In this document: in pieces, positions 1,583 to 58,499 of the stretch
Layout of the letters: each line of letters starts with the position of its first letter
Numbering within the stretch: position 1 is the stretch's first letter
Assembly (NCBI GenBank): GCA_037379345.1
Contig: CM074511.1
Location: 30,448,862 to 30,512,861 of the forward strand
From: Perna viridis
Taxonomy: Eukaryota
DNA: 64,000 nt
Direction: 5' to 3'
The notes under the pieces: model-generated
The model's database searches: none
What the model saw: only the letters and a program-made list of their open reading frames with translations
Told to the model about the DNA's origin: nothing
Translations under genes and position numbers: made by a program

Positions 1583-1902
1583 TCAAATTTCACTTTCATT
1601 AAATTGTAGTGTTATCTGATCTCTTACTAAGTAATTCCTTGCAGAATTATGAACAACAGGTTTAGGAGCACTGGTCAATTGATTTTGTTCCGGAGGAGCA
1701 ACACGTGTATAAAATGCAACATTGTCTTTCTCAGGGGTCTGTGGTGCATGTATGGGCTGTGGTAGATGAACTGGTTGTGGAAGTTGTTGTGGTGTATATG
1801 AAGGAGCACTGAATTGTCCTTTAGATGGGGATAAAAATGCAGGATCCATATTACAGTTGTTTTTCAATTGCTTTGCTGCAGAAAATGTCATTTGCTGTAA
1901 AC
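1583..1902 (-). CDS. Gene A last coding exon (P/Q-rich, ends NESEI*); full model join(9387-9327,7227-6986,6225-6093,5170-3185,1902-1583) = 913 aa type I membrane protein
   Basis: tttcag acceptor gives a phase-1 join into ORF 1583..1891; summed exon length 2742 nt is in frame with no stops. Confidence 0.82.
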
Positions 1903-3184
1903 CTGAAATGAGTTAATGAAATAATGAATGAGAAGTAAAATTACTATTCTAAATCAAACTTTGAAGATAACTAGTACCACTGTGAGCATATGATAGCTTA
2001 CAGACAGATAAACTGCCACATATTCTTGTGACATGCATATACACTAATACTTTCTGTAACTTCTGTTTAACTCAAATCCTGAACCCCCTTTTTTAATCAG
2101 ATTTTTAAAATAGCATTATACCCATGTAATAATGCCTTGAGGCAAAGTCTGAGCAAAAAAAAAAAGAAAAACCCCTGGGATCCCCAAAATCAATCACCTC
2201 AGCATTTTAAATACCAAGTGCACACTGGCATTACCTTCACGTATGGAAAAAATCAGGAAAATGGGTGTAAGGTCTAGGAAAAAACAATGTTTTGGTCTGT
2301 TCAGACAAAACTTTTTATACTGATATTTATGAAAAAAAAAATGAATTTTTACTTAAATAAGAGAATCATGCATATCACTCAGACAAAGTCAAAGTTTTAC
2401 TGATAAAACCCGCTAATTCATTCAGATCTGATAGAAGACTTAACAGCAGATGTACACGGCCATTACTTGATAATCATCATTGGTATCTGTTTACCATTTT
2501 GGAAGTTGTTGTGAATTGTAAATGGATATTTCATACATCATATAAGTTCATGGCAAATCACATTGTGTAATGCTTATTAATGGAAACCTTCTTGGGATTC
2601 TTTTCTTGAATCAAAATGCACTGGGAATGTAATTATCTTGTACCAATAGTTATTTCTACAACAAAATTTCATAAAAATCCATCAAGATGTTCAGAAGGAG
2701 AAGTAATATCTAACAGACACCTCCTACTATTCATCTGAGTAAATGACAAAATCTATGTTACATGTATCCAAATGGAAATTTCCATCTCCTTTCAGATAAA
2801 AACTCAAAATAGATGATAATAGTACATGTACCATTAACATCTCTCAACTCTGACTTCCACATTGGATTATCTCTTCTTGCAGAGGATGTGATAATAAGCA
2901 TATGATGGCCAATTTTCCTATAAAATTTCATTAAAATTAGTCTTATGGGCTGAGCTTACAAGATACATGTCAGTTGGATTATCTACCCTTACAAGCATCC
3001 AAAAACAAAAATTTTCCTTCAAGCACAACTCAATATGGTGCCTAACATTCCAAAAAAATTTCATCAAAATCAATTGAGCTGTATACGATATAGGTGTTGC
3101 GCTTAAAAGATATGAAGACAGACTGGCAGACAGACACTGTGATTTCCATATACATGTACTCTAAAATATTCTTGTGTGACTTAC

Positions 3185-5170
3185 TTGCACTAGGTGGTTG
3201 TGGTAGCTGTCCATCCTCTGTATCCCTGGCTGTAACACGGACAATAGTCTGTCTGGTGATCTGGGGGTTATCTCCAGTTGGGTCAGTAGGATCAGGATTG
3301 GCATCTGTCCACACAACCTGGGAGGTCTTAACTCCTGTACGAGGATCAACTCCTGAGTTCATCAATGTAGTACCAGGAGGAGGTATTCTTGGCTCATCTA
3401 ATATGTTACCTGTGGGTAAAATAGGAGATGGTGCTCCTGGGGTCACAGCTAAGGCATCATGTGGGGTTGACTTGGTTCTCTTCTTGCGTCCATGATGAGG
3501 GCTGTGTTTACTGATGTGGTTTGATGGTGTGGAAGTATACCCAGGCATACCAGGGTGAAAATCTGTAGGACTTTGGAACTGTATAGGAATCATTGGTTGT
3601 TGCTGCTGCTGTGTATTTACTGGATAACCATGCTGGTCCACATAATAACCTGGCTGAGAATAGGCCACAGATAATGGAACAGGATTCCCATAAACTGGGT
3701 TCCCAAATGCATCATAACCAACAACAGGATAAACCAGTTGATTCTGAGGCTCATATTGGGTTTGTGGGTAATACTGTTGCATAGTAGATTCATCAGTAGC
3801 AAATATTGGTGCCATAGCCTCTGGCGGAAGAGGAGTATCCTTAATTGGCCCAGTTTTAGGTAATCGGAATGAATCATTGTACATGGAGTCTCTGTCAAAG
3901 GATTCATCAATGTCTGTTGGCTTTTCTGTTGAGGTTTCATCACCAGTTCGATAAGGGTCAACCTTGCCAGAAACAGGGTCAGCTTTGACATACTTTTTAT
4001 GTGACTTTCTCCTTTTCTTTTTACGTGTACCAGGAGAGGTTGATCCCCTCAATTCACTCACTGATGCTCTGATGGCAGGGTTATTTCTATTAAGAGGATT
4101 ACTTATCATTTCAGGGTCTCCTATTTCACTCTGCTGATCTATAGCCTTATACTTCTTGTCAATGGTACCCGTTTCAGGTAGAACAGACTTTTCTTTAGAA
4201 CTTTTTACATCTGGCTTAGAAGACGGAGCTCCTGGGGCATCATCTGACTTTGTCTGTGAATTTGTTCCCTCCTTCTTTACTTTCTCTTCATTTTCACCTT
4301 TCCCTTCTTTTACGCTTTGTCTCCTCTCCAATTCTCTTTTAAGTTCATTTAGCATTTTGTTTTCTTCATTATTGTTTCCTTCTGAGGTAAGTTTCTTTAC
4401 TCCGTCATAATCATACATATAACCCTCCTTGTCAGGGTTTTCAAATATTCCAGAATTTGGCCGTTTAGTGTCCCCTTTTTCCTGGTTCTGATTCATTCTC
4501 TGTTTACGTCTTTTAACTCCTGACATTTCTCCATCATCATGCTGATCATTTCTGTGACGATCATTCCTATCAACATTTGGACCATTCCCTAATCCATTTA
4601 TTGGAGGAGGTGGAGGAACAACTCCAGGTCTGCCCAAATCCTCTCGTCTACGTCTTCCTGGTGAGTCTCCAACTGACTGTATCCTTCCTCTACTGTCATT
4701 CTTGAGGTACTTCCTCTCTGTTTCAACCTCAGAATGATAACGACCTCTTCCTTTATTTTGACAGTCAAAATCCTCATTTTTGCCTGTATGAATATTCCAG
4801 TTTGCTATGGGAGCCTTCTTTGAATATAGACCAGTAGCACTTCCATTTAATGAATTATTCTGTAATGAATCAATGCTAGGAAAAATTCCTTGGTCTTCTA
4901 AATATAACTTTTTACTTGGTGCGTCAGAAACCAAAGATGGCTCCTTGGAGTAATTGTAATCAGAATTTGTATACCCATTATGGCTATGTGCCTGTTTTAC
5001 AGGTTTCTGATGCCTATATTTTGACATCCCTGGTAGTTTGCGCTCCTTAAAGCACCAAAACAAAATAATTGTGAAGGCAATTAAAACAACGATTCCAACG
5101 ACAATTCCTACTATTGTTCCAGCTGACACACCAGAACCTCCTTCAGAATAAGCAGGGGCATCAGGGTCAC
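3185..5170 (-). CDS. Gene A coding exon 4: TM helix and long disordered cytoplasmic tail
   Basis: 1986-nt open exon inside ORF 3042..5213; ctacag acceptor, GTAAGT donor, phase 1 to 1; TM GTIVGIVVGIVVLIAFTIILFWCF followed by KERK. Confidence 0.9.
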
Positions 5171-6092
5171 CTGTAGAAAAAAAATATGATAATTCATTGA
5201 AAACAAAAAACAAGAAAAAACATTCACCATATGCTCTGTAACAGAGATGCCAATTTCATAGTGATGATCTATATGAAGTACAGGTATAAAATGGTCTGTT
5301 TTTAACACTAAAATTATTTAAGTGTAATAGAACTTCTTAAACAAGTCTTAATTAAAGATATTGGATTTCTTCAAAGAGTGTGACAAATTTCAATTGTTCA
5401 CTAAATGATTGTGGAATGATAAACAATTGGTTTAACATCTATTCTAAGTATATGCATGCAAAATGTCAAATGGAGATGTAAGTTTTATTTAACAAAGGAA
5501 TCTTTAAGAAACTGTCCATCTAGAAACCAGTTCCTATGATATGGGTGGCACATGATAAATTTGATCCCACTGAATATTTTGTTCCAATGTAATGTTATAT
5601 AATATGTATGTCAAATAGTACAAAGATTTTTTTAAATCAACAATGAATGACTCCAGAAATGATTTTACAATTCCCTAAGAAAGCAACCAAAGTTTACACA
5701 AAATGAAAGAGTTATCTCCCTTTTTCAATGAATTTCAATGCTTTCTATGTCATTTATTTCTCTTTAAGCACTGCAGTTAATCATAAACTAACATACAACT
5801 TTGAGAAAGCATGCATTTGTGATATGAAATACCGTAAATGAAAACTTTTTGAAAAAAATTTTCATCTGCTACCCAATGCCTGAATTTTGCATGGATGCCT
5901 TCTAAATTATACCATGAAATTTTCACAGCAGTTGCAACAGCTGTAACATGATTACTTTTAAGGAACAACATTATAATATTGGGACTTCGGGAAACTGTAT
6001 GAAAGTAGATTGAAAATACATGCAGAAACTGCAAGAAAGACAATTTGAATGTGATAATAAATCGGTATAGGGTAAATCTGGCTAATACTTAC

Positions 6093-6225
6093 GAAAAGCC
6101 CTAACATCAATGGTGAAGTCATTCTTAGTGTTGTAAAGAACTTTAGGGGTGATGAGCTCAAATGTAATGGTGCCTCCTTTAGAATACAGTACTCCAGTAT
6201 TTTTTGTGGTACAGGATAACTGTTT
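6093..6225 (-). CDS. Gene A coding exon 3: second half of CUB-like ectodomain
   Basis: 133 nt, phase 0 to 1, KQLSCTTKNTGVLYSKGGTITFEL...DFTIDVRAF; canonical splice sites; paralog at 30661-30793. Confidence 0.88.
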
Positions 6226-6985
6226 CTGAAAAACAAATAAAAAATAAGTGATTATAATTACAAAGAGATCCATTCACATTCACCAAACCATAAGATATCA
6301 GAAAAATGCCTGTTTCTGGTGGCCCTAACTTCTTTTTCGCACCCCAACCCCCAAAATCAATCCAAGATTCGTTTTATCATATTGCACTTTGTTGAGCAAT
6401 TTTTTTATGAAGATCTATACACTTATAATCAGAGTTTAAGCCAGGGTTTTAAAACCATTTGTCACTTTTGCGTTACCCCTTTTTCATGTGCCAAAATTTA
6501 ATCCATATCATAAAACTACTACTTTAGATGAGATAGACATTTATATATTTTGACATACTGAGAATAATATTTAGTGGTCCTATGATTTACATTTGCTGAA
6601 AAAAGAATTCGATTTTGTATAGTCATGTACAAATTTTCAATATTAATCTTCATTCTTTTCATTCAAGGGATTAAAAGCCAGATTAAATTTCTAGCAATCT
6701 TCATGAACCATGTAGCATTTGCCTCATTGTTTCATGTAATTCATAAATTGCTATTAAAGTTGAAAACTGCAACCTAGCTGTGATGGTTCTCTACTGGAAA
6801 ATAAAAATATTTTACCATTTCTGTTATCATTTTATTCTATTACTACAAATGTACATGTAACTCTCTGCTTGGTGTAAGGATTAATATAAGGACATACTTG
6901 TATTGATTGAGTGTATGCAGTCTTATAATATTTTCCTCCATATTTCATTATCATGTGTGCAATGATTTGTTTTGAAAAATCTTAC

Positions 6986-7227
6986 CACAGATGCCCCTCC
7001 AGTCTGAGACCCCTCATAAATACTCAATCGGACACCACAATCATTAATATCAATCATTTTCTGTGTAATTTGAATAGCATAGAATGAATCTGTATATCCG
7101 GAATGAATAACTATAGTACATCTGTAGTCTGGATTAACAGGAGTAACATCAGCTCTGGCCTGTATTGTGTAGGTGTGGTCAAATATTGAGATAGTCCTTC
7201 CACAGCTGACTGGACCATCCATGTACA
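6986..7227 (-). CDS. Gene A coding exon 2: first half of CUB-like ectodomain
   Basis: cag acceptor and GTAAG donor, 242 nt, phase 1 to 0; YMDGPVSCG...YRCTIVI...DINDCGVRLSIYEG; paralogous exon of the same length at 32995-33236. Confidence 0.88.
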
Positions 7228-7284
7228 CTGCAAAAAAAAGTTTTATTAATTCCAGTCAGTGGTGTAGGAGGAGTAATGGATAAG

Positions 7285-7782
7285 TTTGTTTGTTTGTTGG
7301 GGTTTAACGTCCGAGCAGCAATATTTCAGCTATATTCAGACGATGAACATGAAATGGATGATTAAATGAACATGAAATGAAAAAACGGATGGGACACAAG
7401 GATAATAGGGTCGACAAATTTTGATTGCCACTGGAAAAAGGGGGGATGGGTAAGGTCGGGCAATTTAGCCTCCTGTGGCGGAGCGCAAAGGTTCCTACTC
7501 CTATCGAATACCACAGCAGGGTTCTTTAACGTGCGTTGAACGTGGCATCTTTCCCAACACGGTGCACCACCATGGTTTGCGGTCAGGTTTTCCGTATTAT
7601 AGCCTGACAACCCCAACACGTCAGGGGTACCCCATTCCACCACCTGGGGCACACATCCCAGTTGCTCTGTAGGCAGAGCGCCTAGCCCCTGGCTAGGTTT
7701 CTGAGCACTATTTAGTCGCCTTTTACGACAAGCTTAGCGCTGCTGCAGGCCTATTCTTTTAACACCCGGACCTGCACGGGGC
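7285..7782 (-). mobile_element. ~500-bp SINE-like retroposon in gene A intron
   Basis: Perfect 12-bp TSD GTAATGGATAAG (7273-7284, 7783-7794); (AAAC)n 3' tail; Nin-domain-like GCACGTTAAAGAACCC; GC-rich relative to flanks. Confidence 0.85.
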
Positions 7783-9326
7783 GTAATGGATAAGAGGAGG
7801 GTAGCTCTCTGTTTAACAGCAGTATGGAAGGATGTCCCTATGAGTATGTATTAAACCCATCCCATGCATTTCATAAGTAGGGTTTAAAAATAGTACATTC
7901 AGCATTAATTTAACATTCTAAATTAGAATTAATAATTTTCTGACTTTCATCATAATGATAATCCCATGAGAACTATCAGCTATTTCAAAATTTTCCTCTA
8001 CCAGTATGTAGACTATAGATATGAAAGTTATATAAATATACTAGCCTGAATCCCATTCTAATAGACTTGAGAATATGGCTAATGGCAAAAAGAGAGTGAT
8101 GTGAAGAGGATTAGAAACTTTTTTTTTTATTTCTTATGGTACATTGCAAGATAAATGATGTTACTGGTAACAGAAAGTAATGAGGCTGGGCAAATTCTTA
8201 AAATTTCTGTTCATATAAAATTAGTGCTATTATTAGGACATGCTATTTCATATCTATTCCTCTTTTATGATATACAATTTATGAGATATTTTCCACATTT
8301 AATCAGAAAAGTTAAACAATGTTAAGTTAAATAGATATCTCAATAAGGTGTTTCACAGAGTGCAGCATGATACAACTGCAGTGGTCAAACCCTGATGGGA
8401 AAAAGTTTTTGGGGTTGTATAAAAATACATATCAAATATCTCAAAAACTTTATAAGATATCTTGTCTATTACGAGACATCTTGTAAATTTACTCCTGTAA
8501 GATACCTTATTGAACTTCATATAATATCTCATTAATATTATAAAAAAATATAAGATATCTAAAATGTTTTACACAATATCTTTTAAAAAGTAAATTAATT
8601 ACATCGGGTATATTTTGCCTCAATCAGCAATGATTGCCCCTTCACATGTGATTATTTTTTAGCCAATCAGATAAATTCTTTGTATTGATGTGGTCTGTAA
8701 AGGCACCCGTTTCCTAAATAGCTTGCAAGTGGCAAGTTACATGTATTATCCATTTACCCTGTAGTCTGAAGATCACATGATCAATTTTCTACAGTCTTAA
8801 TTTAGGTTTTCTTTATTATTATGGTACAAATGAAGGTATGACATTTATAAGATAACTCATTAAAGTTTTCAGATATCTTATGAACTATCTATTATAAGGC
8901 AGGTATCTTATAAAAGTTATAAGATTTGTTATAAAGTTCATAAAATATCTTATATTAAAAGCATTTAAAAGATATTAAAAATATTAAAAGCATAAAGTTT
9001 ATGTAATATCTAAAATACCATAATAGATATCTCATATATTTATTGAGATATCCTATTAAGAAAAAATATTATATCTATCAAAAGACCTCTTATAAAGGAT
9101 ATAAGTCATAAGATAGCTAAAATCTTACAACCTTTGTAAGATATCTCATGAAGTTTATGAGATAACTTTAATAATTAATAAATACAAATATGTTACAGCT
9201 TAAGGTTCAAGTATACCCATAAAATATTAAATAAATTCATCTGAGGATTCAAACTTGAGAAATACCTTATTACGCAAATTAATGTTTAAACACAAGTCAA
9301 AAGAAATGTAAAATTTAATGACTTAC

Positions 9327-9387
9327 AGTTGTACTGCCCATGAGCTGAGCTGATCGCCAAAGCAATAACAAGAAATGAAGATGTCAT
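9327..9387 (-). CDS. Gene A coding exon 1: signal peptide MTSSFLVIALAISSAHGQYN
   Basis: accaccATG start at 9387, hydrophobic leader, GTAAGT donor; 61 nt, phase 1; acceptor tttcag before 9414; homologous exon in gene B. Confidence 0.85.
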
Positions 9388-21564: not shown

Positions 21565-22443
21565 CTGGGACAACAACTGCTCTGGGCTCAATCTGATAAT
21601 TGGCATCATTAATGGACCCCCTAGAAAGATAGAGTGTGGCTGATCCTCCTGATGTCATGTATTTCCTGGTTTGGTCTATTGGTGATTCCTTAGAGATAGT
21701 AAACTGAAAAAAAGGAGAAAAAGATAAGTATTTACATATGTATTATGTATGTCGAATAGATTTTGCCATCTTCTGGATGAGTTACATACTAGCAATTGAA
21801 GGCTTTTGCCTGTCTGTCACAGATTGATTGATTGATTGTGCTTTTACGTCCTAGCTATAGCAGGTGAAATCTATGACAAATAACCCATATAAACATTTGT
21901 AATTTTTTTTTATAAAAATAAAAATAAGAAAACAAATGGAAATACGGTAGTTTCCAATCTCATAAAAAATCCAACCCAATTTTCATTTTTAGACTAAAAG
22001 TTTTTTTTTTTTTTTTTGTATTCTTTGTTACCCTGTTGAATTTGTTCAGCCCGTTGTGTTGTACTAGTAATTTGTCAAACATGCTCATTGACAATGCATG
22101 AAATCAGGGAATGACGTTAGAAGTTGTCCTAAGGAAAAGTTCAATTATACTTTCCGTAAAGGTAACCAAAGCTCCTTTATTTTTCTTTGCCTTACAATTC
22201 TATTTCCCGTGTTATCTGGACCGTCATACATATGGAATTAAATGCCAACATCATATACTGAAGCACGAACTATTTCCACCTGAAACCGTCTCATCTCCCC
22301 AAAACCGAGTATTGGTAAGAGTAATCATACATTCTCTTGTTGTTCCTGGGTTTGTTTGAAATGCATCTCCCCCAAGAATTGTTGCTGAGTTTTCCCCACT
22401 TCAAATTTCTTTGCTGAACATTGTGAAGCACTATCCATATAAA
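21565..22443 (-). pseudogene. C': inverted pseudogenised copy of gene C ectodomain exons (22443-22196 and 21703-21565)
   Basis: Reverse complement of 53527-53774 and 54296-54434; same exon lengths (248, 139) and splice sites; first exon has a -1 and a +1 indel and a CAT>TAA change; no signal or TM exon found. Confidence 0.9.
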
Positions 22444-31417: not shown

Positions 31418-31764
31418 GCCTTAATAAAGGAATATAATTAATATCTGTATAAAGAACGTTTGTTCGTTTTATAAATAAAGACGACAGCATTATTTGTAAA
31501 TATGGTTATATTAAATTATTTGAAAATATCTTTAAGCCTTTACATTTGTATGAGTGATCACGCACAAGTGGCATATCAATCAATGAGGCATCTCCTAAGT
31601 AAAACCATCCTCAGCTAGTAAACTAATTCTTGTCCTAAAATTTGGATGACTTGGGATATACCTATACATAAAATATGCAGACTTAAGACAAGGACAATTC
31701 TTAGGCTATTCTTTGACAAGTCCTTAGATGTTTTCGTTAATGGGCCGTGCATTCCATGATATAT

Positions 31765-32420
31765 ATATATATTCAAACGTTTCAGAATGTGACGACTCTA
31801 TTCGTTACACTGCTCCATCAGATAAAATTGATACAGGGAAGATACGTAAACGTATCGAAAGGTCTGAAAAATTCCCAACGATGTTGGAACTGTCAAATTT
31901 GTGATGCAAATTTTAGTCGTTCCCTCCACGGGACTCGAACTCGTACCACTGTGACTTCTATGGCAACACCGCCTGCACTAAGTCCAGCGCTCTAGACCAC
32001 TCGGCCAGCTAGGCTATATAAAAATATAGCTTTCGCTGGCCAAGTCATTCCTCCTCGTAGGATTTATCTAGGGCTGTAACTTAGTACACGATGTATGGCA
32101 GTACGAGACAGTTCATTTAGATGTTATTATGTAGGATAGAGGATCAAATTAATGATGCATGTCACAACAAATCAATATTATACAAACTTCTCAGAATGTG
32201 ACGACTCTATTCGCTACACTGCTCCATCGGATCAAATTGATGCAGGGAAGATACGTAAACGTATAGAAAGGTCTGAAAAATTCCCAACGATGTTAGAACT
32301 GTCAAATTTGCAATGCAAATTTTTAGTCGTTTCCTCAGCGGGACTCGAACTCGTACCGCTGTGACATCGTTCTAACATCTTTGGGAATTTTTTTCAGACC
32401 TTTCTATATGTTTACGTATA
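31765..32420 (-). repeat. tRNA-derived, (TA)n-associated repeat with a ~420-bp unit; other pieces at ~12280-12380 and 35890-36110
   Basis: A box TGGCCGAGTGG and B box GTTCGAGTCC on minus strand; unit recurs at ~32185. Confidence 0.7.
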
Positions 32421-32994
32421 TTCTATGCCAACAGCAGCATTAACACCAAATTTGATAAATATGTACATTCTATAGATATCGGAAAATTATATGTTTTAAA
32501 AATGTTAAAAAAGGTGTCATCGAAATTGTTGCTCAGGAATTCTTTTCTCTTTGAAACAGGTTTTAGTTGGTTTTTAATAGAAAAGGTGAAAAAAGACACA
32601 AGTATAAGACTTTCACTCATTTTATTTTAAACTCAAATCTAGAAATATGTTGTATTTTTTCAAACAATAATCTACGAAAGACACACAAACGACATTACAT
32701 TCCCTGTGAAAATCAAATTACTCAAACAAAAATTACCAAATCAAATGACATGAAGCACGTACTTGTACGTAAGAATTACAATTGGTATTGATCAGATACG
32801 AGAACTGACCGACCTAAAATAAAGTCCCTGTGTTTTTTTAATGCATTGGGCATATTGGAATTAAAGTTGGGTTTAGACATAACGATTTCATAAAAAAATA
32901 TTTACCTTAAACGCGGATTTCATAATATACAGAATGCATTATTTTAATCTACAATCCTTGCCCAAAAATCGTGTCAGCTAATAAAAAAACATAC

Positions 32995-33236
32995 CAAAGA
33001 AACTCCTCCTGTATGGGATCCCTCATAAATACTCAGTCGGACACCACAATCATTTATGTCAATTACTTTAGTTGTAATTTGAATAGAATATAATGATCCT
33101 TCATATCCAGAGTTAATGGTAATGTTACATCTATAATCTGGGATATAATCTGTGGCGTAAGATCGGCTGTATATTGTGTATGTTCTGTCGGATAATGAGA
33201 CAGACCTTCCACAATTGGCTGGATCATTCATGAACA
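32995..33236 (-). CDS. Gene B coding exon 2 (CUB-like)
   Basis: 242 nt, open, 51/81 aa identical to gene A exon 2 by hand alignment, no indels, Cys retained. Confidence 0.82.
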
Positions 33237-34904
33237 CTACAAAAGTAACGGTGTCTTTAGTATGTATAACTAGTACTTCATCATTTAATATATATTCATC
33301 ACCGTGAGATGTGCGTCACTTTCTAGCACAGACGGGCTATTTCAATATTTTGTATTGTAGCCCTTATGAAAATTTCATAATTCAACCAGTCGGAATCCAT
33401 TCATAACAGATGTGGGCTTTGGTTTGCGCCTCCGGTTGGTGGAGTTGAATTACAAAAACTTTTTAAATTTTTATTTTATGTAACATATACAGTTGACAGT
33501 AAACAAAAACACCTTGTTTAATTTTAAATAACATAGTGAAGTTTTTCCGATGGTTTCTGTTCGTTATGCAAATAAATCTACAAGTTCAAAATAAAGTCAT
33601 AAGTGTTTGAAGCTAAAGTCTTTTGGTTTTAAATCTGAGAAATGTTTTGTTTACGTATTTTAACACATTTGAAAAATATGAAGTTCAGTAACATTCTGTT
33701 TGATATATTGCCATCTTAGAACGACTTTATGTTAAAACGAACAAATAATATGAATAACAACACATTGTAAATGTACTGCTACAGGTCCAAAGGCACTGAT
33801 AATGCATAATTAAGGAAAATCGAAGATTGATTTAAGGAAAATTTGAAACGAATTACGAAGGCATTGGTAACGACTATTAATCGAACACAAAGAGTGGGTA
33901 GTGAATGGCGAATTCATTAAAATTATCTTAATAATATATGTAATATAAATAGTAACTCTATTAAAAAGACGTTATATGGTTAGACGCGTTCTTATTTGTA
34001 AAGTGTGAAAACAGGTATCCTTATAAATTATCATTTTTATTGGTTCAAAGTCAAGTTTTGAAACAAAATTTGTCATTTCCAAATAAGAGGTTTTGAAGTT
34101 ATAAAAGATTTTAAAATCAAAATCAACTGGGTAGCATGACATTGGTACTAAACTTTTAAGTTATTTTTTTTTAGAAATTTTCGCGCCATCACTAATTGAA
34201 GCTTAAGTTAAGATCTTTCCAAAATGTTTTAAAAAGGCTAGTGTAAGCCCACTTTCCAAAGGGAAAATGTCACTTCTCTAGATTATAACAGGCCAATCTT
34301 TGAATTACCTAAAATAGTAGAAGAACACCTATTAGAAATCAACTGCGTGAGTATTTATAAACTAAATGTAGTGGGCTTTAGTAAACCATGCTCTTTTGTT
34401 GCATTAACTGCAAAGGTGTAGGGGCATGAAGCTATGAATATTGCATAAAAATATCAACTATGTTGTTATAACATAAAATTTGTTCATAACACAAATATAT
34501 AGAAAAATAAAATTTTGTGGCAATAGTTCATTGTTATGAGGCCATAATGGTGCCATAAATTTGCATTATCAAGAAAAACTGCTGAGAATTGTAAATGTTG
34601 TTGTTGTTTGTGTGGACATATTTACATCCAAAAAACTATGTCCACACCCAAGAAACAACTTTATATTTTCACATATGATGAAGTTTGTAATAATAAATGT
34701 ATTCACTAAATATCTCAGGGGTGGACACCATTTCCGTGCCAAAAATATGACCAGAAAATGACAAAAAAAGTACAAACTTTGACAGTATATTTGAATATTG
34801 GTCAACTTTGAGCAAATTGTCAATGCAAGAATAATATAGTCAAAAATCTTTTTTGTTTTCTCAGTTGTGAAAGATTCTAGTCTACAAATTCAAAATTGAA
34901 TCAT

Positions 34905-35882
34905 TCAACACTTTGTCCAACTCTCCAAAGAAGAGATGGTGAAAAACCATAACTAAATCTGTGCTATCCTCTTTTGGTATCTCTACCAAAGACGATAATT
35001 ATGATATGCCGAATATGTACTGGATTCCTAAACTCTACAAGAATCAAACAACGCTAGTAGCTGGATCTAGCAAATGTACCACGAAACCTTTTTCACACTT
35101 TTAACTTCTATACTCACAGCTTTCTTTCAAAGAGGGTCTCCAGGCCTACCACTATACTTATTACTTTCGTAGGGGTATTAATTAAATGTGGATTATTAAA
35201 AATTTGAAGATCTTCTGGAAACCCTCATTTCAAGATTATTATCAAAATTCAATAGCATAAAATTTATTAAAAAAATGATTTTTCAACTCTTTATACTTAT
35301 ATTCCCCATACTCACTTAAAATCCCGACTCAAAAACATTATACATCGTTATTACTAAAAAAAAAAAGACGGTACACATGAATACAAATATGTAGATTTCT
35401 CATACTTTGTAAAAAAGCAAAACAAAAAATGCTGGAATTTTATATCGATTTGTTCAGTGTGGTGGACGCGTATTTCAACAATCGATCGGCATTCCAATGG
35501 AAACAAATTATGTTGCACTACATGCTGACCCATTCCTTCACTTTTATGCGGCTGAATAGCTGCTCTGGTCCAAGCTAGATCCTTTATTCTCCGTTTCCGC
35601 TATATATTATCGTTAAAAAATCCTAGTTATGGGGTTTTCATACACAGCATCTACCCCAAAAAAACTGGAGAAAAAGGCCACTACAGACACTGTGAAGTCA
35701 GCAGGATATCTAGACCTACACTTAGAAATCAAAGGGAAAGGTAAAGGAAAACTATTGACCAAACTATACGACAACCGCGATGACTTTTCATTCCGTATTG
35801 TAAACTTTCCTTTTCCCTTTCATATCACAACTACACAGACTTTTTGTATCATGCTAGAATTCTTACAATTAGGCTTTTGGAA

Positions 35883-35936
<54 letters not shown>

Positions 35937-36497
35937 AACGTCTCAGAATGTGACGACTCTATTCGCTACACTGCTCCATCGGATCAAATTGATATATAGC
36001 CTAGCTGGTCGAGTGGTCTAGGGCGCTGGACTTCCAAAAATTTGCATCGCAAATTTGACAGTTCTAACATCGTTGGGAATTTTTCAGACCTTTCTATATA
36101 TATATATATACACAAAAGTTTTATGGTCGTCATTATGAACTCGTGGTGAAAACTAATTTGTTCAAAGTATCATTGTTTCCTTTCCTCTTTCGTCTATTCC
36201 GGACTTGTTTTTTTATGAGCAACTCGGCGGGCGTTTCTACAAAAGCAAAGGACGGTTACCCTACCGGCGCACCATGTTCCTGTTTTTAGTGGGATCCGAA
36301 TTGCTCATTGACTTTTGGTACTTTGTATGTATGATTTTAGATATTTATGTTCTTTGTTGTATATGTCTGTTTTCCATGTCTGGTCTTTGTCCCTGGATTA
36401 TATTCTTTTGATTTCGGCTAGGATTTTAGTTCCCTTATTTACAATTAGGCTTTTGGAACAGGGTTATGTTGCGATAAAATAAGTCTATACTACAAAG
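34905..36497 (+). mobile_element. Degenerate Penelope-like RT element interrupted by (TA)n and tRNA-derived repeat
   Basis: MYWIPKL, DFSTLYT, GIPM, FRYI, YLDLHLEI...TKLYDNRDDFSFRIVNFPF motifs with many frameshifts; 3' repeat at ~36170-36440. Confidence 0.8.
35888..35930. repeat. (TA)n microsatellite
   Basis: Direct reading. Confidence 0.95.
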
Positions 36498-37614
36498 GTG
36501 TTATTGCGATATTTTAACTTACTTTTTCATTTTCCTATAGACATATTTTGAAGTGAAGTTTAAAAATATCCAAATCCTAGCAAAAAATATAAGTTGTTTT
36601 TTTTTATACTTAATGACATCACCAAATACTGCTTCTATATGTAGTTTTAAGGGATTTTGTATGAAAATGAGAAGTGAAGGGTAGTTTTTTTTATCCTAAA
36701 ATGTAGAGCACAAGCTTGGAACAACAAAATATTTTGCCAGAAGTTGTAATAATAAAGATATTTTTTGTGTGAATACTGCGTATTAATGAGTTCAACATGT
36801 GAGTCGTATGTTCCTATTTTTTAATAATTTGCCTAAATTCTCTAAATTCACTCAATTTTCGTCTTCAGGTTCAGTGGAACTCGTGCAAGAACATGAATAA
36901 AACTTTGTTTACAAAGCAGACGCATATTTAACAAGCGAATTCCCAAAGAGAGTTTTCGTTTGGGTCTTATTTTGATATATTTTTTAACATACTCCTTTAG
37001 AAGATTCAAGATAAATGAAAGTTTCTTAATTCCTGATACCGAGTCCTAACAGCAGGACTATGATATTAGAGGACTGTTCGTAATCCAAAAAAAAAAGCAA
37101 GAGTCAAATTTGCTAAAAATAACTACAAGGAGATCCTGACAAGCAATCGACATAGTGTTGGACTCTTGCTATTAGATAAGCCCTTTTATTTTTAAATATA
37201 TACATGTACCTAACTGAAAAAAATAGCAATATTAGTGAGAAAATTCCGTGTGATTATATATAGATTTTCAGTCTACGTGAAATGCGTGAAAGATCCTGAA
37301 ATTTTGTTCCTCTTCTAAAAAAATGACGAGGTAACTTTTTTACTTTCTTTAAATTGTGTTTTTTTCTCGAATTAAAGTACTATTTGTTTCTATACTTTCT
37401 TTTGAAAAAAATACAATGTAATTTAATTAAATTGAAACTCGCTTTTATATATGCATTCGCTTTAAAATCAATTCATTCCTTTCTACTTGTTGTCAATGCG
37501 TAAACAATACGCTGGTGTTTGTTCCTTATTCGATTTCATGTTCATTATTCATTTGTTAAAACGGACGAAATGCTCTTTATTCATTGCATATAGGAACATT
37601 TAATATGTACTTAC

Positions 37615-37675
37615 AGTAATCCATTCCATGAATTGTACTTATTACAAATGCAATAAAAAGAACTGACAATATCAT
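37615..37675 (-). CDS. Gene B coding exon 1: signal peptide MILSVLFIAFVISTIHGMDY
   Basis: gccaccATG Kozak context, 61 nt, phase 1, GTAAGT donor; same size and 5'UTR context as gene A exon 1. Confidence 0.82.
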
Positions 37676-53526: not shown

Positions 53527-53774
53527 TTTATATGGACAGTGCTTCACAATGTTCAGCAAAGAGATTTGAAGTGGATAGAAATTCAGCCACAATTCTTGGG
53601 AGGGAGGCAGTTCAAACCAACCCAGGAACAATAACAGAATGTATGATTACTCTTACCAGTAATCGGCCTGGGGAGATGAGACGGTTTCAGGTGGAAATAG
53701 TTCGTGGTTCAGTATCTGATGCTGGCGTTCATTTCCATATGTATGACGGTCCAGATAACACAGGGAATAGAATT
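53527..53774 (+). CDS. Gene C coding exon 2 (CUB-like, first half)
   Basis: 248 nt, phase 1 to 0, YMDSASQC...TECMITL...DAGVHFHMYDG; GTAAGG donor. Confidence 0.87.
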
Positions 53775-54295
53775 GTAAGGCAAAAAAATTTAATGAAATT
53801 TGGTTGTCCTCTGGGCAAGACTAATTGTACTTTCACTGTTGTCCAAATAGTAGTTTCACTTGTCCTGGGTAATAGTTAGGACAGCCTTTAATGTCATTCC
53901 CTGATTTCATGCATTTTCAATGAGCATGTTTGACAAATTACTAGTACAACACAAAGCTGAACAAATTCAACAGGGTAACAAAGAATATCAAAAATCACTT
54001 ATAATCTAGTAAAAAATGAAAATTGGATTTTTTTGAGATTGGAAACTACTGTATTTCTATTCATTTTCTTATTTTCACTTTTATAAAAAAAAAATGTACA
54101 AATGTTTGTACAGGTTATTTTGTTATTGATTTCACCTGCTATATCTAGGACATTAAAGTACAATCAATCAATCAATCTGTGACAGACAGGCAAAGGCCTT
54201 CAATTGCTAGTATGTAACTCATCCAGAAGATGGCAAAATCTATTCGACATACATAATACATATGTAAATACTTATCTATTTGTCCTTTTTTTCAG

Positions 54296-54434
54296 TTTAC
54301 TATCTCTAAAGGAACACCAGTAGACCAAACCAGGAAATACATGACATCAGGAGGATCAGTCACATTTTATCTTTCTAGGGGGTCCATTAATGATGCTAAT
54401 TATCAGATTGAGCTGCATGTAGTTGTTGTCCCAG
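54296..54434 (+). CDS. Gene C coding exon 3 (FTISKGTPVDQTRKYMTSGGSVTFYLSRGSINDANYQIELHVVVVP)
   Basis: 139 nt, phase 0 to 1, ttttcag and GTAAGT; not in the ORF track. Confidence 0.87.
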
Positions 54435-54842
54435 GTAAGTTACTAAACTGAGGGTGGACTTGATATCAATCAACTAGGTTAGCCTTAATGATTAAAAAAA
54501 ACTATGACCACAGCAGTTTTGGAGCTAAGCACCTAAATTCAACTTGGTTAAACTAATTTTGCAAATAAATGTGGTAAACCTGTTGATAAGTACCTGTGAG
54601 TTCATCTTTGGAATTATTGATGAATATGCTGTTTTAATACCATAATTATTGTGAAAATAATTACTGCTGAGTGGTAGAGAATTATACATGTACATATATA
54701 TAACATTTTGGGGGGTTCATTTTTTTTCTTGCAAATTTTAAGCTAGTATTGGCATAAAAATTTCAGACATACCATCATTACTCATAGCAGAAAATTATAA
54801 AGCAGTAAAGAAATCAGACACTTGGTAAAAGGAAATAATTTT

Positions 54843-55043
54843 TTACCCTACTGATGCACCTGGTCAGCATGCTCCCAGTTTTAAGTGGAGTCTTAATTAC
54901 TCATTTACTTTTGTTTCTTTGTGCATATTATTTTGGTTATTTTATGTTGTTTGTTGTGTGTTTCTGTTTTCCCTGTTCGGTCTTTGTCCCTGGATTGTGT
55001 TCTTTTGATTTCCGCTGTAATCTAGGTTCCCTTGATTACTCTT
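54843..55043 (+). mobile_element. Penelope-like 3' terminal repeat copy
   Basis: GCACCTGGTC...TTGGTTCCCTTGATTACTC family sequence. Confidence 0.8.
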
Positions 55044-55287
55044 TATAGATAAAAAAATTCAGAGGGTTGGGATTTTGTTAGTGTTTTTGACTGGCATGTA
55101 TATTTCTCAAATTTCAAATTAGCATTGCAATTACTTGTACATTGATTTGCATTAGTTTTTGAATGCACATGTAGAAAATGTACTATAAATGCTAGAATTC
55201 AAGTTGGTATGCATATTGAAATACTTTAATTTTTTCCTGATGCATTGCCTTTTATTGCATTTTTAATCATGGTGCGATTCCTTTTAG

Positions 55288-55662
55288 GTGACCCTACAAC
55301 CAATGATGAATGTAAAACTGGTAATGAGTATGGCTGTATCCACTATGGCTATCAGCAAGTTGTCGACAAAGAAACAGTTATTGGCATCGTAGGTGGCGTG
55401 TTTGGATTAATCCTTTTTATTGTGATCCCAATTATTGTCATATGTTGTTATCGTAAAAGCAAAGGTGTCAATAAGAAGTGGGATGAGTTTAGACTTGCTG
55501 ACAAAGTAAACACAGCTGCAGATATACATGCCTCAAGTGCAAGTTTAACCAAATCTAAGAAGGAAATGTGGACTTCACAAAGCTCTAAGGCTCCATACTC
55601 TGACATGAAGAGGTCACACAGAAGTAGATATAGTGATGGAAGTGCTAGTGAATTTAGTGCAA
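55288..55662 (+). CDS. Gene C coding exon 4 (GDP linker, Cys loop, TM helix, juxtamembrane)
   Basis: Phase 1 to 1; TM VIGIVGGVFGLILFIVIPIIVICCY then RKSK; starts GT GAC CCT like gene A exon 4. Confidence 0.88.
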
Positions 55663-55711
55663 GTAAGTCATTGAAATATAAATTGAGGGGGCAGCGGGTC
55701 CAAGGGTTGAA

Positions 55712-57140
55712 CCCCCCTCCTCCTTGTTGGAAACTTTGTTAATTTTGTGGAGAATTTGCTCTAAAATGAGCAAATAATAGCCTTTAGCTTCTCCTTTTCA
55801 TATTCTCTAGATCTGCTTATGAGGGGGCACATCTGCCTACCTATGTATCTATATAAATAACTAAAATAAGAAAGGATTTGTTTTCTTTATACCTGCATGA
55901 GTGTATACAGTATAAAAACCTGTGATAATCATATGACCAATGTCAAAGACATATGACGGTCTTCTTTCCCACCTAATAGAACATTTTTATCAGTGTCACT
56001 TGAAAATTTCATGCAACACATAGTATGTGACTTTCCATAAACATAAAGAAGCTAGTTCTATTAGAATCAAAATAACTCTTGGAGACTCCATTTTATCATT
56101 TTTTAACACAGATTGGCCATTTATGATTACCATGTTTTAATGCTTGGGGTAAAATAAGGTGTTTAATGTTTTAAGTTGCATTCTTTCTAAAAGTCAGATA
56201 GAGGGTGATTCATGCATATCAAAAACCTTCCAAATTCAGTTTTTTTTCTTGTCTTAGTTTTTCATTTGGTTGTTGCGCTTTTGAGATAAAAATTGTATAG
56301 ATTGTACATAACATTGGCACTGTTCAAGAGTAGTCATTCTTGATTCAGTTTCATTTGGTTGATTTGTATAAGTTTATAAATGTAGGGTTTTCTGAAAAGT
56401 GCATATCTGATGCAGAAATGATTATCCCCCCTCCTCCTTGTTGGAAACTTTGTTAATTTTGTGGAGAATTTGCTCTAAAATGAGCAAATAATAGCCTTTA
56501 GCTTCTCCTTTTCGTATTCTCTAGATCTGCTTATGAGGGGGCACATCTGCCTACCTATGTATCTAGATAAATAACTAAAATAAGAAAGGATTTGTTTTCT
56601 TTATACTTGCATGAGTGTATACAGTATAAAAACCTGTGATAATCATATGACCAATGTCAAAGACATATGACGGTCTTCTTTCCCACCTAATAGAACATTT
56701 TTATCAGTGTCACTTGAAAATTTCATGCAACACATAGTATGTGACTTTCCATAAACATAAAGAAGCTAGTTCTATTAGAATCAAAATAACTCTTGGAGAC
56801 TCCATTTTATCATTTTTTAACACAGATTGGCCATTTATGATTACCATGTTTTAATGCTTGGGGTAAAATAAGGTGTTTAATGTTTTAAGTTGCATTCTTT
56901 CTAAAAGTCAGATAGAGGGTGATTCATGCATATCAAAAACCTTCCAAATTCAGTTTTTTTTCTTGTCTTAGTTTTTCATTTGGTTGTTGCGCTTTTGAGA
57001 TAAAAATTGTATAGATTGTACATAACATTGGCACTGTTCAAGAGTAGTCATTCTTGATTCAGTTTCATTTGGTTGATTTGTATAAGTTTATAAATGTAGG
57101 GTTTTCTGAAAAGTGCATATCTGATGCAGAAATGATTATC
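55712..57140. repeat. Near-identical tandem duplication, 714-bp unit
   Basis: 55712-56425 repeated at 56426-57140 with about 3 substitutions seen. Confidence 0.95.
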
Positions 57141-57390
57141 GCTATGGGAAGGTAAAGAATATGTAGACAAAAAAAAACATTGTTTGTTTTGTGGGTTTCT
57201 CTACACCATGAATCACTTTACCATTAGCAGTGTCTCTTAATTTTATGTGGACAGGTATTCAAATGTGTACTTATTTGAATTTGCAAGAAATTTCTTATAA
57301 TAATATTTCAGGATAAGAGGTATGATTTCATAATTAATTTAATTTATTGAGGCATTAAAATAAATGAAAATCTGTGGTTTTTTTTTTCAG

Positions 57391-58499
57391 GCATTGACTT
57401 ACCACCTAAGCATAGACCTCCACCCCCACCATATGATGAAAGTGAAAGGCGATATAGAGATGAAAGATATAGAAATGATCGCTACAGTGATGATGGACTT
57501 AGAAGTGACCGTTTTCGAAATAATCGCTACAATGACCGTGAAAACAGATACAATGAAAGAGTTGACAGAGATTATCGAGCTGAGAGAAATGGAAGAAACA
57601 GATACGAATCTGATAGAAAGTCTTATTACAGCTCATCTGATGATAATTCATTTGTACAAGCCAGGGATGACCATCCTCAAGAGGTTTTTGTAGAAAGGGT
57701 CATAGAACCTAGAGTCAAGCCAACTACTAAATCAGGGAGACAACAGATGGCTAAATATTATGAAGATGATGAGGATACCTATGACACAATTGTTGATAAA
57801 GAAAGTCCAAAGTTAAAGGTCAAGAAAAAGGAAGTGAAAGAAAGTGCCATACAGGCTGATTCATCTGAAGACAATGAATCTAACACTGAAAGTGACAATG
57901 AACCTCCATCTACAGATGAAACAGATGATGACGACATAATCAGGAAAAAAGAAAAGGAGGCCAAAAAGTCCGCTTTATATGCAAAGCCAAATAAATCAAA
58001 AAAGGAAAAATTAGAAAATAATCAACAAGCACAACCAATACCACAGCAGCCTGTCCCAGGGCCATACCCCATTCCTCCTGGGGGTGTACACATGGTCCCT
58101 GGTCAAGCAATCATGTATAATACACAACATCCCATGATGCTGCCAAGACCTGTAGCTCCAATTCAGCAGCCATACTTTACACAGCCTCCTCATCCAAGAC
58201 CATTGATGACAATGTCAGCAATACCTCAACAGCCTGTAATGGGTCAAGTGTATCCTCAGCCCCCTGTTTCAGGCAGACTACCAGCCCCAGTTCACCGACC
58301 ACCAACATATTCAACATCACAGAACCATCCACAACAACCAGTGTTTACACACTTAGTGCAGAGAGGTTATGGTCAGGATTCGGCAAGTGTAGATGGATCA
58401 GATGGTGGAAGATATCACACAGACGAATCAGATGTTATGGCTAATTTAGGGAGTGGTGTGGAATTCATGAAAAGAAACCAAAATGAATCCACAGTATAA
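57391..58499 (+). CDS. Gene C last coding exon (PPPPPY, R/D/Y-rich, acidic, P/Q-rich, ends NESTV*); full model 657 aa
   Basis: ttttcag acceptor; phase-1 join reads open into ORF 57747..58499; summed exons 1974 nt. Confidence 0.88.

What the first reader, a model, noticed from the sequence alone, without database searches (positions are those of the whole stretch)
1583..58499. Cluster of uncharacterised single-CUB-like receptors with PDZ-binding tails
Seen: genes A and C are highly diverged yet share intron phases 1/0/1, a YMD...C...CxIxI...DxGV...YxG...GGxxT ectodomain, a TM exon starting xDP, juxtamembrane Cys, long disordered tails and the ending NES-x-hydrophobic. Known: S-x-[VI]-COOH is a class I PDZ ligand, and CUB-bearing single-pass proteins such as NETO, SOL-1 and LEV-10 are ion-channel auxiliary subunits. 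Inference: a head-to-head, probably co-regulated receptor or adhesion pair from a family I cannot name.
Basis: partly seen in the sequence, partly recalled or inferred. Interest (0 to 1): 0.75.

Follow-up and report, generated by a model that had tools for sequence, protein, structure and literature searches.

The report
Mollusc single-CUB membrane protein gene cluster
The window holds a small cluster of mollusc-only genes for single-pass membrane proteins with one CUB domain outside the cell and a long floppy tail ending in a scaffold-binding motif; they are real and ancient, but what they do is still unknown.

Summary
Gene A (minus strand, coding 9387..1583) and gene C (plus strand, coding 52192..58499) are real five-coding-exon genes with the same intron phases (1/0/1/1). 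Both have a signal peptide, a ~125-aa ectodomain on two exons, a TM exon, a disordered tail and an S-x-[IV] end.

C's three downstream junctions are carried by one spliced contig in each of 4 of 4 runs from 4 studies. A's model rests on colinear orthologues and canonical splice sites only.

Profile-profile comparison joins the two families (99.4%, E 2.9e-21, CUB plus TM). Predicted structures of database orthologues hit CUB domains first (TM 0.7-0.8; Z up to 12.3). Pfam's CUB model matches 0 of 63 members.

Both families occur only in bivalves and gastropods among named hits, and all are uncharacterised. The A/C split predates the bivalve-gastropod split. A- and C-type genes have consecutive gene identifiers in an oyster and a limpet.

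"Head-to-head pair" is only partly right. The start codons lie 43 kb apart, with a TM-less A duplicate (B), a C-like pseudogene and transposons between them. Co-regulation and any channel-auxiliary role were not tested. C also carries a conserved PPxY motif.

The scan's notes hold no earlier copy of this finding on other DNA.

The parts
9327..9387 (-). Gene A, ATG-bearing exon (signal peptide, 20 codons + 1 base, phase 1). An acceptor-like site about 25 nt upstream of the ATG suggests a further 5'UTR exon that was not located.
   Evidence: Found through 69% DNA similarity to the matching exon of gene B and read. Kozak-like ACCACC before the ATG and a GTAAGT donor. No RNA evidence.
6986..7227 (-). 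Gene A exon 2: first 80 aa of the CUB domain (YMD..C..CTIVI..DCGV..YEG).
   Evidence: About 65% identical to the Mytilus edulis orthologue P0003.
6093..6225 (-). Gene A exon 3: last 44 aa of the CUB domain (fourth Cys, GGTIT); ends in phase 1.
3185..5170 (-). Gene A exon 4: stalk (xDP), TM helix, juxtamembrane Cys and 661 aa of mostly disordered tail with conserved short motifs.
   Evidence: Disorder and TM helix are seen in the model of orthologue P0003.
1583..1902 (-). Gene A exon 5: last 105 aa, ends NESEI plus stop.
21566..22441 (-). C-like pseudogene fragment (psi-D). The exon-2-like part (22196-22441, 57% identical to C) has a TGA and a TAA. The exon-3-like part (21566-21703, 83% identical) is open. 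No TM or tail exon was found.
30661..37675 (-). Gene B, an A-type duplicate. Signal exon 37675..37615 and CUB exons 33236..32995 and 30793..30661 are all open with the same phases. No A-like TM or tail exon is detectable in the window, and its 3' end was not resolved.
   Evidence: Sister to window A in the tree (100/99) with a branch ten times longer.
52192..52294 (+). Gene C exon 1, coding part (signal peptide, 34 codons + 1 base, phase 1). The transcript contigs carry up to 219 nt before exon 2, so at least 116 nt of 5'UTR lie upstream.
   Evidence: The loose end of the spliced contigs before 53527 matches 52265-52294 exactly. Read.
53527..53774 (+). Gene C exon 2: first 82 aa of the CUB domain.
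   Evidence: Junction 53774>54296 in 4 of 4 runs.
54296..54434 (+). Gene C exon 3: last 46 aa of the CUB domain (GGSVT).
   Evidence: Junction to 55288 (reported as 54432>55286, cut +2, GT..AG) in 4 of 4 runs.
55288..55662 (+). Gene C exon 4: stalk with two extra Cys, TM helix, CC juxtamembrane, proximal tail.
   Evidence: Junction 55662>57391 in 4 of 4 runs. 77% identical to orthologue P0022, against 49% for exon 2.
57391..58499 (+). Gene C exon 5: 368 aa of tail with PPPPPY near its start, an acidic stretch, a Pro/Gln-rich stretch, LVQRGY and GVEFMKR, ending NESTV plus stop. The 3'UTR runs beyond 58650.
   Evidence: All 4 runs carry a 12-nt in-frame insertion after 58187 relative to the window.

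Best explanation
SHOWN. The window carries the whole repertoire in this bivalve genome (four copies) of two anciently duplicated, mollusc-restricted families of type I membrane proteins.

Each protein has a signal peptide, one divergent CUB domain as its only extracellular module and a short stalk. It then has a TM helix rich in small residues with juxtamembrane cysteines, and a long disordered cytoplasmic tail studded with conserved short motifs.

A (about 913 aa) and C (about 657 aa) are the two functional founders. B is a young, fast-evolving duplicate of A that has no detectable TM or tail exon. Psi-D is a broken partial copy of C.

INFERRED mechanism. The proteins act as transmembrane adaptors or co-receptors. 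The CUB domain, possibly together with the conserved TM helix, engages an extracellular ligand or a membrane partner in cis. The tail couples that partner to cytoplasmic machinery: PDZ scaffolds through the C-terminal [S/T]-x-hydrophobic end (both families), and in C also WW-domain proteins such as Nedd4-type ubiquitin ligases through a conserved membrane-proximal PPxY.

The outcome would be control of the localisation or turnover of the partner. No partner, tissue or binding event was tested.
For: - Gene models: see the parts list. C is spliced exactly as predicted in one contig per run in 4 of 4 runs from 4 studies.
- Homology of A and C over CUB plus TM: hhalign 99.4%, E 2.9e-21.
- CUB fold, A orthologue P0003: ectodomain pLDDT about 70-89. 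Foldseek top hits are spermadhesins (TM 0.79-0.81), TSG-6, C1r CUB2, neuropilin, Kremen and Neto2.
- CUB fold, C orthologue P0022: ectodomain pLDDT above 90 with 63 aligned sequences. Foldseek's top nine hits are CUB domains; clostridial enterotoxin and collagen-binding domains appear from rank 10. In the Foldseek-independent VIA search the top 23 rows are all CUB (Z 12.3 to 7.5), then Z drops to 6.0 or less.
- Four Cys sit at CUB-like positions and are invariant or nearly so in 14 A-type proteins.
- Tails are disordered apart from short elements.
- C-terminal T/S-x-V in 12 of 15 C-type proteins. Membrane-proximal PPxY in 13 of 14 database C-type proteins plus the window's.
- A-type ends: S/T at -2 with V/I/L/F in 6 of 16, or 11 of 16 if a terminal Ala is allowed.
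- Range: the 11 of 20 clusters looked up that carry names are all bivalves or gastropods.
- The A|C split has 100/100 support and both classes sit on each side.
- Only four copies exist in this genome, all in the window.
Against: - Pfam CUB (PF00431) matches none of 63 family members at E<=0.01, and none of the window's exons at E<=10. Sequence profiles of both families find no CUB chain in the PDB. CUB status therefore rests on predicted folds of orthologues, the Cys pattern and automatic UniRef names.
- Bivalve C-type proteins have lost the second CUB disulfide.
- The PDZ-type end is missing in Lottia, Elysia and one Mercenaria isoform of C. It is replaced by acidic-x-acidic-I in several A orthologues (Saccostrea, Tegillarca, Solemya).
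- Short linear motifs such as PPxY and S/T-x-V arise easily in Pro-rich disordered tails.
- No binding, localisation or expression pattern was tested. A's transcription in this species was not shown.
Confidence: 0.55

Rival explanations
1. They are specifically auxiliary subunits of ligand-gated ion channels, working like NETO, SOL-1 or LEV-10. The CUB domain would dock on the channel's extracellular domains, the TM helix would pack against the channel, and the PDZ end would anchor the complex at synapses.
For: CUB plus a single TM plus a PDZ-type end is the NETO-like layout (recalled). Neto2 chains from GluK2 complexes are among the Foldseek hits, with alignments running on from the CUB domain (224-231 columns for the A model, 194-205 for the C model), but at rmsd 10.7-15.8. 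The TM and juxtamembrane exon of C is far better conserved than its ectodomain (77% against 49% to P0022).
Against: There is one CUB domain and no LDLa module (Pfam finds nothing), so the defining architectures are not met. No expression, neuronal or otherwise, was examined. The tails (500-750 aa) are much longer than those of NETO (recalled). The long Neto2 alignments have rmsd 10.7-15.8 and say little.
Confidence: 0.15
2. A and C form an obligate heteromeric receptor or an adhesion pair, through CUB-CUB or TM-TM contacts. Selection for their joint regulation is what has kept the two genes linked since before bivalves and gastropods split.
For: Consecutive gene identifiers on one contig for the A-type and C-type genes in Saccostrea cucullata (LOC134278256/57, 337,807-bp contig) and in Lottia gigantea (LOTGIDRAFT_238343/44, 636,676-bp scaffold). 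The TM motif is shared between the families.
Against: Tandem duplicates can stay linked by inertia. In this window the two genes are 43 kb apart with two other copies and transposons between them. No co-expression or complex prediction was run.
Confidence: 0.15
3. They are immune-type recognition receptors. The CUB module would be a fast-evolving binding domain, duplicated and shuffled as in other bivalve immune gene families.
For: The A-type CUB module has been duplicated into TM-less forms and fused to C1q domains in Mytilus (P0017; P0018 with Pfam C1q at 2.4e-8; P0098 and P0099 carry PF00386). Gene B and psi-D show local birth and death of copies. C's ectodomain evolves faster than its TM exon.
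Against: The full-length A and C genes are single-copy here. They are conserved one-to-one across classes with highly conserved tails (68% A exon 4 identity to Mytilus), unlike expanded immune families. No known immune signalling domain was found in the tails.
Confidence: 0.1
4. The resemblance between A and C is chance, or the gene models are artefacts.
For: Pairwise identity of the exon-2 peptides is only 24%. tblastn of A orthologues reaches C only at E 0.098.
Against: hhalign E 2.9e-21. The same four intron phases in both genes. Spliced contigs for C in 4 of 4 runs. Full-length orthologues of both genes in many molluscs.
Confidence: 0.01

Closest known systems
NETO1/NETO2 (vertebrates) and Neto (Drosophila), auxiliary subunits of kainate-type glutamate receptors
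   Same: Type I membrane proteins with CUB ectodomains and a single TM. NETO1 is recalled to have a PDZ-binding C-terminus. Neto2 CUB domains are among the structural matches.
   Different: NETO has two CUB domains plus an LDLa module and a short tail (recalled). Here there is one CUB, no LDLa and a 450-750-aa disordered tail. No sequence-level relationship was detected.
SOL-1 and LEV-10 (C. elegans CUB-domain channel auxiliary proteins)
   Different: They carry four to five CUB domains (recalled). They were not recovered by any search here.
Neuropilin-1/2
   Same: The CUB (a1/a2) domains are among the best structural matches (Z 12.2). Neuropilin is a single-pass co-receptor whose short tail ends in S-E-A, a PDZ (GIPC) ligand (recalled). 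Several A-type proteins end in SEA, SIA or SYA.
   Different: Neuropilin also has two F5/8 domains and a MAM domain, and a very short tail (recalled).
Spermadhesins, and the TSG-6 CUB_C domain (minimal single CUB domains)
   Same: Best fold matches (TM 0.73-0.81; Z 11.8-12.3).
   Different: Spermadhesins are secreted proteins consisting of the CUB domain alone, and TSG-6 is a secreted protein with a further module; neither has a TM helix or tail. Identity is only 8-22%.
Shisa/CKAMP-type and other PY-motif transmembrane adaptors (Ndfip, Commissureless)
   Same: By analogy only (recalled): small ectodomain, single TM, long Pro-rich disordered tail with PPxY motifs, and in Shisa6-9 a C-terminal PDZ ligand. 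This matches the layout of the C-family tail.
   Different: Their ectodomains are Cys-rich and not CUB. No homology was detected.

Membership tests
CUB domain superfamily | Jelly-roll beta-sandwich of about 110 aa that superposes on solved CUB domains | tested here: met
   Tested on database orthologues, not on the window's joined models. P0003 (A-type): Foldseek 1spp_B E 8.5e-7, TM 0.79; 1sfp TM 0.81. P0022 (C-type): 1sfp TM 0.73, 1spp_B TM 0.77. VIA top 23 rows are all CUB, Z 12.3-7.5, and the next row is Z 6.0.
CUB domain superfamily | Four conserved Cys (two disulfides, C1-C2 and C3-C4) | tested here: inconclusive
   A family: four Cys invariant or nearly invariant at the expected places. 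C family: gastropod members keep four, while bivalve members including the window's C keep only the first pair. Disulfide geometry in the models was not inspected.
CUB domain superfamily | Match to the curated sequence model (Pfam PF00431) | tested here: not met
   0 of 63 members at E<=0.01. None of the window's exons at E<=10. No CUB chain was found by sequence profiles in the PDB. UniRef's automatic name 'CUB domain-containing protein' is attached to at least nine members; its basis was not visible to me.
CUB domain superfamily | Ca2+-binding acidic triad of the ligand-binding CUB subclass | not tested
   No residue-level structural alignment was available.
NETO family | Two CUB domains followed by an LDLa module before the TM (recalled) | tested here: not met
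   One CUB-fold domain only, directly followed by stalk and TM. No Ldl_recept_a hit.
SOL-1 / LEV-10 | Four to five tandem CUB domains (recalled) | tested here: not met
   Single domain. In the library search every eukaryotic hit has one N-terminal stretch.
Class I PDZ ligand (motif class, not a protein family) | [S/T]-x-hydrophobic at the free C-terminus | tested here: met
   Window A ends S-E-I and window C ends S-T-V. Conservation: C family 12 of 15; A family 6 of 16 (V/I/L/F) or 11 of 16 (with Ala). Binding was not tested.
PPxY (WW-domain-binding) adaptors | A cytoplasmic PPxY motif conserved among orthologues | tested here: met
   Window C has PPPPPY at the start of exon 5. 13 of 14 database C-type proteins have a PPxY within about 110 aa after the TM (187 in the partial protein P0095); Solemya has only a distal one. 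In the A family a PPxY occurs in only 3 of 15 distinct database proteins. Binding was not tested.

The most novel reading that the evidence does not exclude
A and C are the two subunits of one heteromeric, mollusc-specific CUB receptor or auxiliary complex. Their genes have been held side by side for more than half a billion years because they must be expressed together. TM-less derivatives such as gene B, and the Mytilus CUB-C1q fusions, act as secreted decoys or ligands of that complex.
Probability: 0.12. Interest if true: 0.65.

Novelty: new variant of a known kind. Interest (0 to 1): 0.4.

Why it matters
CUB-bearing single-pass proteins are recurrent organisers of receptors and channels in other animals. 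Molluscs are major models for synaptic plasticity, and mussels and oysters for innate immunity, yet much of their membrane proteome is unnamed.

This work delimits two sister families: single CUB, conserved TM, long motif-rich tail. It gives exact gene models and a fold assignment that the Pfam CUB model misses. It also lists testable tail motifs (a PDZ-type end, and PPxY in C) and points to A-C linkage that appears to be conserved from limpet to oyster to mussel.

That makes the families directly testable by expression atlases, peptide arrays and knock-downs. It is not a new principle, and the genes are already in databases as "uncharacterized" or "CUB domain-containing protein".

Tried and rejected
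- Pfam on the single exons and on full-length orthologues gave only weak TM-type noise.
- Sequence profiles against PDB chains gave nothing relevant.
- ESM Atlas on the CUB-TM part of P0003 gave CUB clusters at 0.87, which is a lead only. On the C tail it gave no usable hit.
- Three weak multi-stretch hits of the library search (P0060, P0066, P0071) were rejected as unrelated. P0060 and P0071 carry bacterial repeat domains (SprB; Big_13/FG-GAP). P0066's Pfam matches were incoherent.
- A simple scan for a signal-peptide exon upstream of A gave no convincing candidate. The exon was then found through its similarity to B's.
- No TM or tail exon for B or psi-D was found by tblastn. ORFs downstream of B's exon 3 were uninformative, so B's 3' end is left open.
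- My first reading, that the PDZ-type end is not conserved (note, from five A orthologues), was too harsh. It was corrected after all ends were tabulated.
- The 16-nt identity around the exon-4 donor sites of A and C is probably splice consensus plus chance. The flanking residues are not conserved in A's Mytilus orthologue.
- The automatic names "MTB-like" and "mediator subunit 1.1-like" on pectinid C-type proteins were disregarded as low-complexity artefacts.
- Paper searches found nothing on these genes: six identifiers gave 0 papers, and two keyword searches were seen as listings only. I read no paper. Everything said about NETO, SOL-1, LEV-10, neuropilin, Shisa, PDZ classes and PPxY-WW binding is recalled. 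Supplements were closed and not consulted; gene lists there could mention these loci.

Full report
WHAT IS THERE

The window is AT-rich (about 28-38% G+C). It lies on a 723-Mb, 46-contig assembly. Its best named protein matches are mytilid and other bivalve proteins.

Four related gene copies lie in the finding's range. A profile of the first ectodomain exon finds only these four in the whole genome; the tool warns that such counts are lower bounds.

Gene A runs on the minus strand. Its ATG exon is 9387..9327, followed by 7227..6986, 6225..6093, 5170..3185 and 1902..1583. All borders have canonical AG/GT and the phases are 1/0/1/1. tblastn of five bivalve orthologues is colinear with exons 2-5. 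The ATG exon was found through its 69% DNA similarity to the matching exon of gene B. An acceptor-like site just upstream of it suggests a further non-coding exon that I did not find. The exon lengths sum to about 913 codons. No RNA evidence was obtained for A.

Gene C runs on the plus strand: 52192..52294, 53527..53774, 54296..54434, 55288..55662 and 57391..58499. Its phases are also 1/0/1/1. The exon lengths sum to about 657 codons.

RNA evidence for C is direct. Twenty of 23 listed runs hold part of the stretch. I laid four of them, from four studies. Each has one contig of 2354-2477 nt that joins exons 2, 3, 4 and 5 at exactly these borders with GT..AG.

Each of those contigs carries a further 96-219 nt before exon 2. 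The end of that extra sequence matches 52265-52294 exactly, which located exon 1.

The tool only guesses that these runs are RNA. However, a joined form needs either RNA or a processed copy, and the genome search finds no other copy. All four runs carry a 12-nt in-frame insertion after 58187 relative to the window.

Between A and C lie the following:
- ORFs at 14.0-17.6 kb (+) that look like a DNA transposon but have no Pfam match.
- A C-like pseudogene fragment on the minus strand. Its exon-2-like part (22441..22196) has a TGA and a TAA, and its exon-3-like part (21703..21566) is 83% identical to C.
- Gene B on the minus strand. Its signal exon (37675..37615) and CUB exons (33236..32995, 30793..30661) are all open and have A's phases. 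No TM or tail exon is detectable.
- Reverse-transcriptase fragments at 41.2-41.8 kb (-) and 48.4-48.9 kb (+).

A and C therefore do point away from each other, but their start codons are 43 kb apart. The immediate divergent neighbours are B and C, 14.5 kb apart.

ARE A AND C RELATED, AND WHAT IS THE ECTODOMAIN?

The exon-2 peptides of A and C are only 24% identical, and those of A and B 63%.

A profile of the three peptides, searched against 1.84 billion representatives, gave 61 hits at E<=0.001. In 58 of them there is a single match at the N-terminus. The three weakest, multi-stretch hits are unrelated repeat proteins.

The full-length hits fall into two tail types:
- A-type proteins are 740-950 aa. 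Their tails carry motifs such as LPPEA..AP.F.TD, HYYP, PG.PGYTSTP, a QV.WTD...DPTDP...NPQITR block and FLSPSK.
- C-type proteins are 530-680 aa. Their tails carry PPxY, FVER.IEP, LV.RGY and GVE.MKR.

hhalign of a five-species A alignment against a five-species C alignment gives 99.4% probability, E 2.9e-21, over 181 columns. Those columns cover the ectodomain, stalk and TM; the tails do not align.

I did not fold joined models of the window's genes. Instead I folded database orthologues:
- P0003 (Mytilus edulis, 68% identical to A's exon 4), with 5 aligned sequences, gives an all-beta ectodomain at pLDDT about 70-89 and a TM helix. The tail is almost wholly below pLDDT 50.
- P0022 (C-type, from a Logan contig), with 63 aligned sequences, gives an ectodomain at pLDDT above 90.

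Foldseek against the PDB puts CUB domains on top for both models. The leading hits are spermadhesins (TM 0.73-0.81), TSG-6 CUB_C, neuropilin a1/a2, Kremen, PCPE-1, C1r/C1s/MASP and Neto2. For the C model the first nine hits are CUB domains, and other beta-sandwich domains (clostridial enterotoxin and collagen-binding domains) appear from rank 10.

The Foldseek-independent VIA search of 48,161 chains lists 23 CUB entries first (Z 12.3 to 7.5). It then drops to Z 6.0 or less for unrelated jelly rolls.

The A family keeps four Cys at CUB-like positions. Gastropod C-type proteins keep them too, while bivalve C-type proteins, including the window's, keep only the first pair.

Against this, Pfam's CUB model matches 0 of 63 members, and sequence profiles find no CUB chain in the PDB. 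The domain is thus a strongly diverged CUB, recognisable by fold. UniRef's automatic naming already calls at least nine members "CUB domain-containing protein".

AGE, RANGE AND LINKAGE

Of 20 hit clusters looked up, 11 carry names, and all are bivalves or gastropods. The genera are Saccostrea, Mercenaria, Mya, Pecten, Sinanodonta, Lottia, Elysia, Haliotis, Lymnaea and Patella. The word-indexed searches add Mytilus, Pinctada, Tegillarca, Solemya, Ylistrum, Argopecten and Mizuhopecten. No non-mollusc relative appeared, but these searches have limited reach.

A tree of the signal-plus-CUB part was built from 33 rows. The window's genes were represented by exon 2 only, and database proteins were cut to 175 aa. 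It separates A-type from C-type with 100/100 support, and gastropods and bivalves sit on both sides. The duplication therefore most simply predates their split.

In the same tree B is sister to the window's A (100/99), on a branch ten times longer. The Mytilus TM-less (P0017) and C1q-fused (P0018) forms group with Mytilus A, so they are independent derivatives (C1q).

A- and C-type genes carry consecutive identifiers on one contig in two species:
- Saccostrea cucullata: LOC134278256/57 on a 337,807-bp contig.
- Lottia gigantea: LOTGIDRAFT_238343/44 on a 636,676-bp scaffold.

In Pecten maximus, Pinctada imbricata and Solemya velum both families sit on a contig of the same chromosome-scale length.

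THE TAILS

The window's A ends S-E-I and C ends S-T-V.

In the C family, 12 of 15 proteins end T/S-x-V, mostly KR-TT[DTE]V. The exceptions are a Mercenaria isoform and the Lottia and Elysia models, which stop right after the conserved M[KR]R.

In the A family, 16 distinct ends were tabulated. Six have S/T at -2 with V/I/L/F, five more have S/T at -2 with a terminal Ala, and five do not fit: EEEI, EYEI, DDDI, SEVI and ITVT.

A membrane-proximal PPxY is present in the window's C and in 13 of 14 database C-type proteins. It is rare in A.

C's TM and juxtamembrane exon is much better conserved than its CUB exons (77% against 49-50% to P0022). A is evenly conserved, at 65-70% to P0003.

HOW IT MOST LIKELY WORKS

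Shown: two sister families of type I proteins with one CUB domain, a conserved TM helix, juxtamembrane Cys and long disordered tails bearing conserved short motifs.

Inferred: they are transmembrane adaptors or co-receptors. The CUB domain, and perhaps the TM helix, holds a partner. The tail links that partner to PDZ scaffolds and, in C, to WW-domain proteins such as Nedd4-type ligases, and so sets the partner's place or lifetime at the membrane.

The channel-auxiliary reading (NETO, SOL-1, LEV-10) is one special case. The defining architectures of those families are not met, and nothing here tests that function. An A-C heteromer and an immune-receptor role remain open.

COMPARISON AND NOVELTY

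The nearest known kinds are the CUB-bearing single-pass co-receptors and auxiliary proteins: NETO, neuropilin and, in layout, CDCP1. For C's tail, the nearest are the PY-motif adaptors with PDZ ends. All of these comparisons are recalled.

Membership in any of those families fails on architecture or was not detectable by sequence.

The genes themselves are already in public databases as uncharacterised or automatically CUB-labelled proteins. I found no paper on them: identifier search gave 0 papers, and keyword searches were seen as listings only.

I rate it a new variant of a known kind, of moderate interest.

Noticed in passing
window 30661-37675 (-): Gene B keeps an open signal exon and both CUB exons but has no detectable TM or tail exon. 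It sits on a branch ten times longer than its sister A. Mytilus has independently made TM-less and C1q-fused derivatives of the same CUB module (P0017, P0018, P0098, P0099).
   Followed up: partly
window 21566-22441 (-): A partial C-like pseudogene. The exon-2 copy has two stops and a probable frameshift. The exon-3 copy is still open and 83% identical to C.
   Followed up: partly
window 58187 (+): All four runs laid carry a 12-nt in-frame insertion, in two variants differing by one letter, in the Pro-rich part of C's last exon relative to the window. It looks like an allelic indel.
   Followed up: no
window 3170-3190 (-) and 55655-55672 (+): The donor sites that end exon 4 of A and of C share 16 identical bases and the same phase. 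This is probably splice consensus plus chance, since the flanking residues are not conserved in A's Mytilus orthologue.
   Followed up: partly
window 56510-57322 (+), intron 4 of gene C: Contigs of 513 and 356-371 nt lie here at 99-100% identity and low depth in all four runs. Neighbouring bins (54889-55087, 56083-56480, 56879-57276) show high summed depth from many short repeat-like contigs. This could be intron remnants, or repeats transcribed elsewhere.
   Followed up: no
window 14044-17582 (+): A run of ORFs (287, 114, 102 and 183 aa) that looks like a decayed DNA transposon. The last has a Cys/His pattern that I recall as SWIM-like. Pfam gave no match.
   Followed up: partly
window 30733-31073 (-) and 38887-39480 (-): Two copies of a repeat share an ORF start (MSNSAG/S..SRKAEDAY..TGAPGPCSQF). 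One abuts B's exon 3.
   Followed up: no
window 41206-42554 (-) and 45158-50557 (+): Fragmented non-LTR retrotransposon remains. Pfam RVT_1 matches at 41206-41785 and 48425-48946, with frames broken into many ORFs. They fill the space between B and C.
   Followed up: partly
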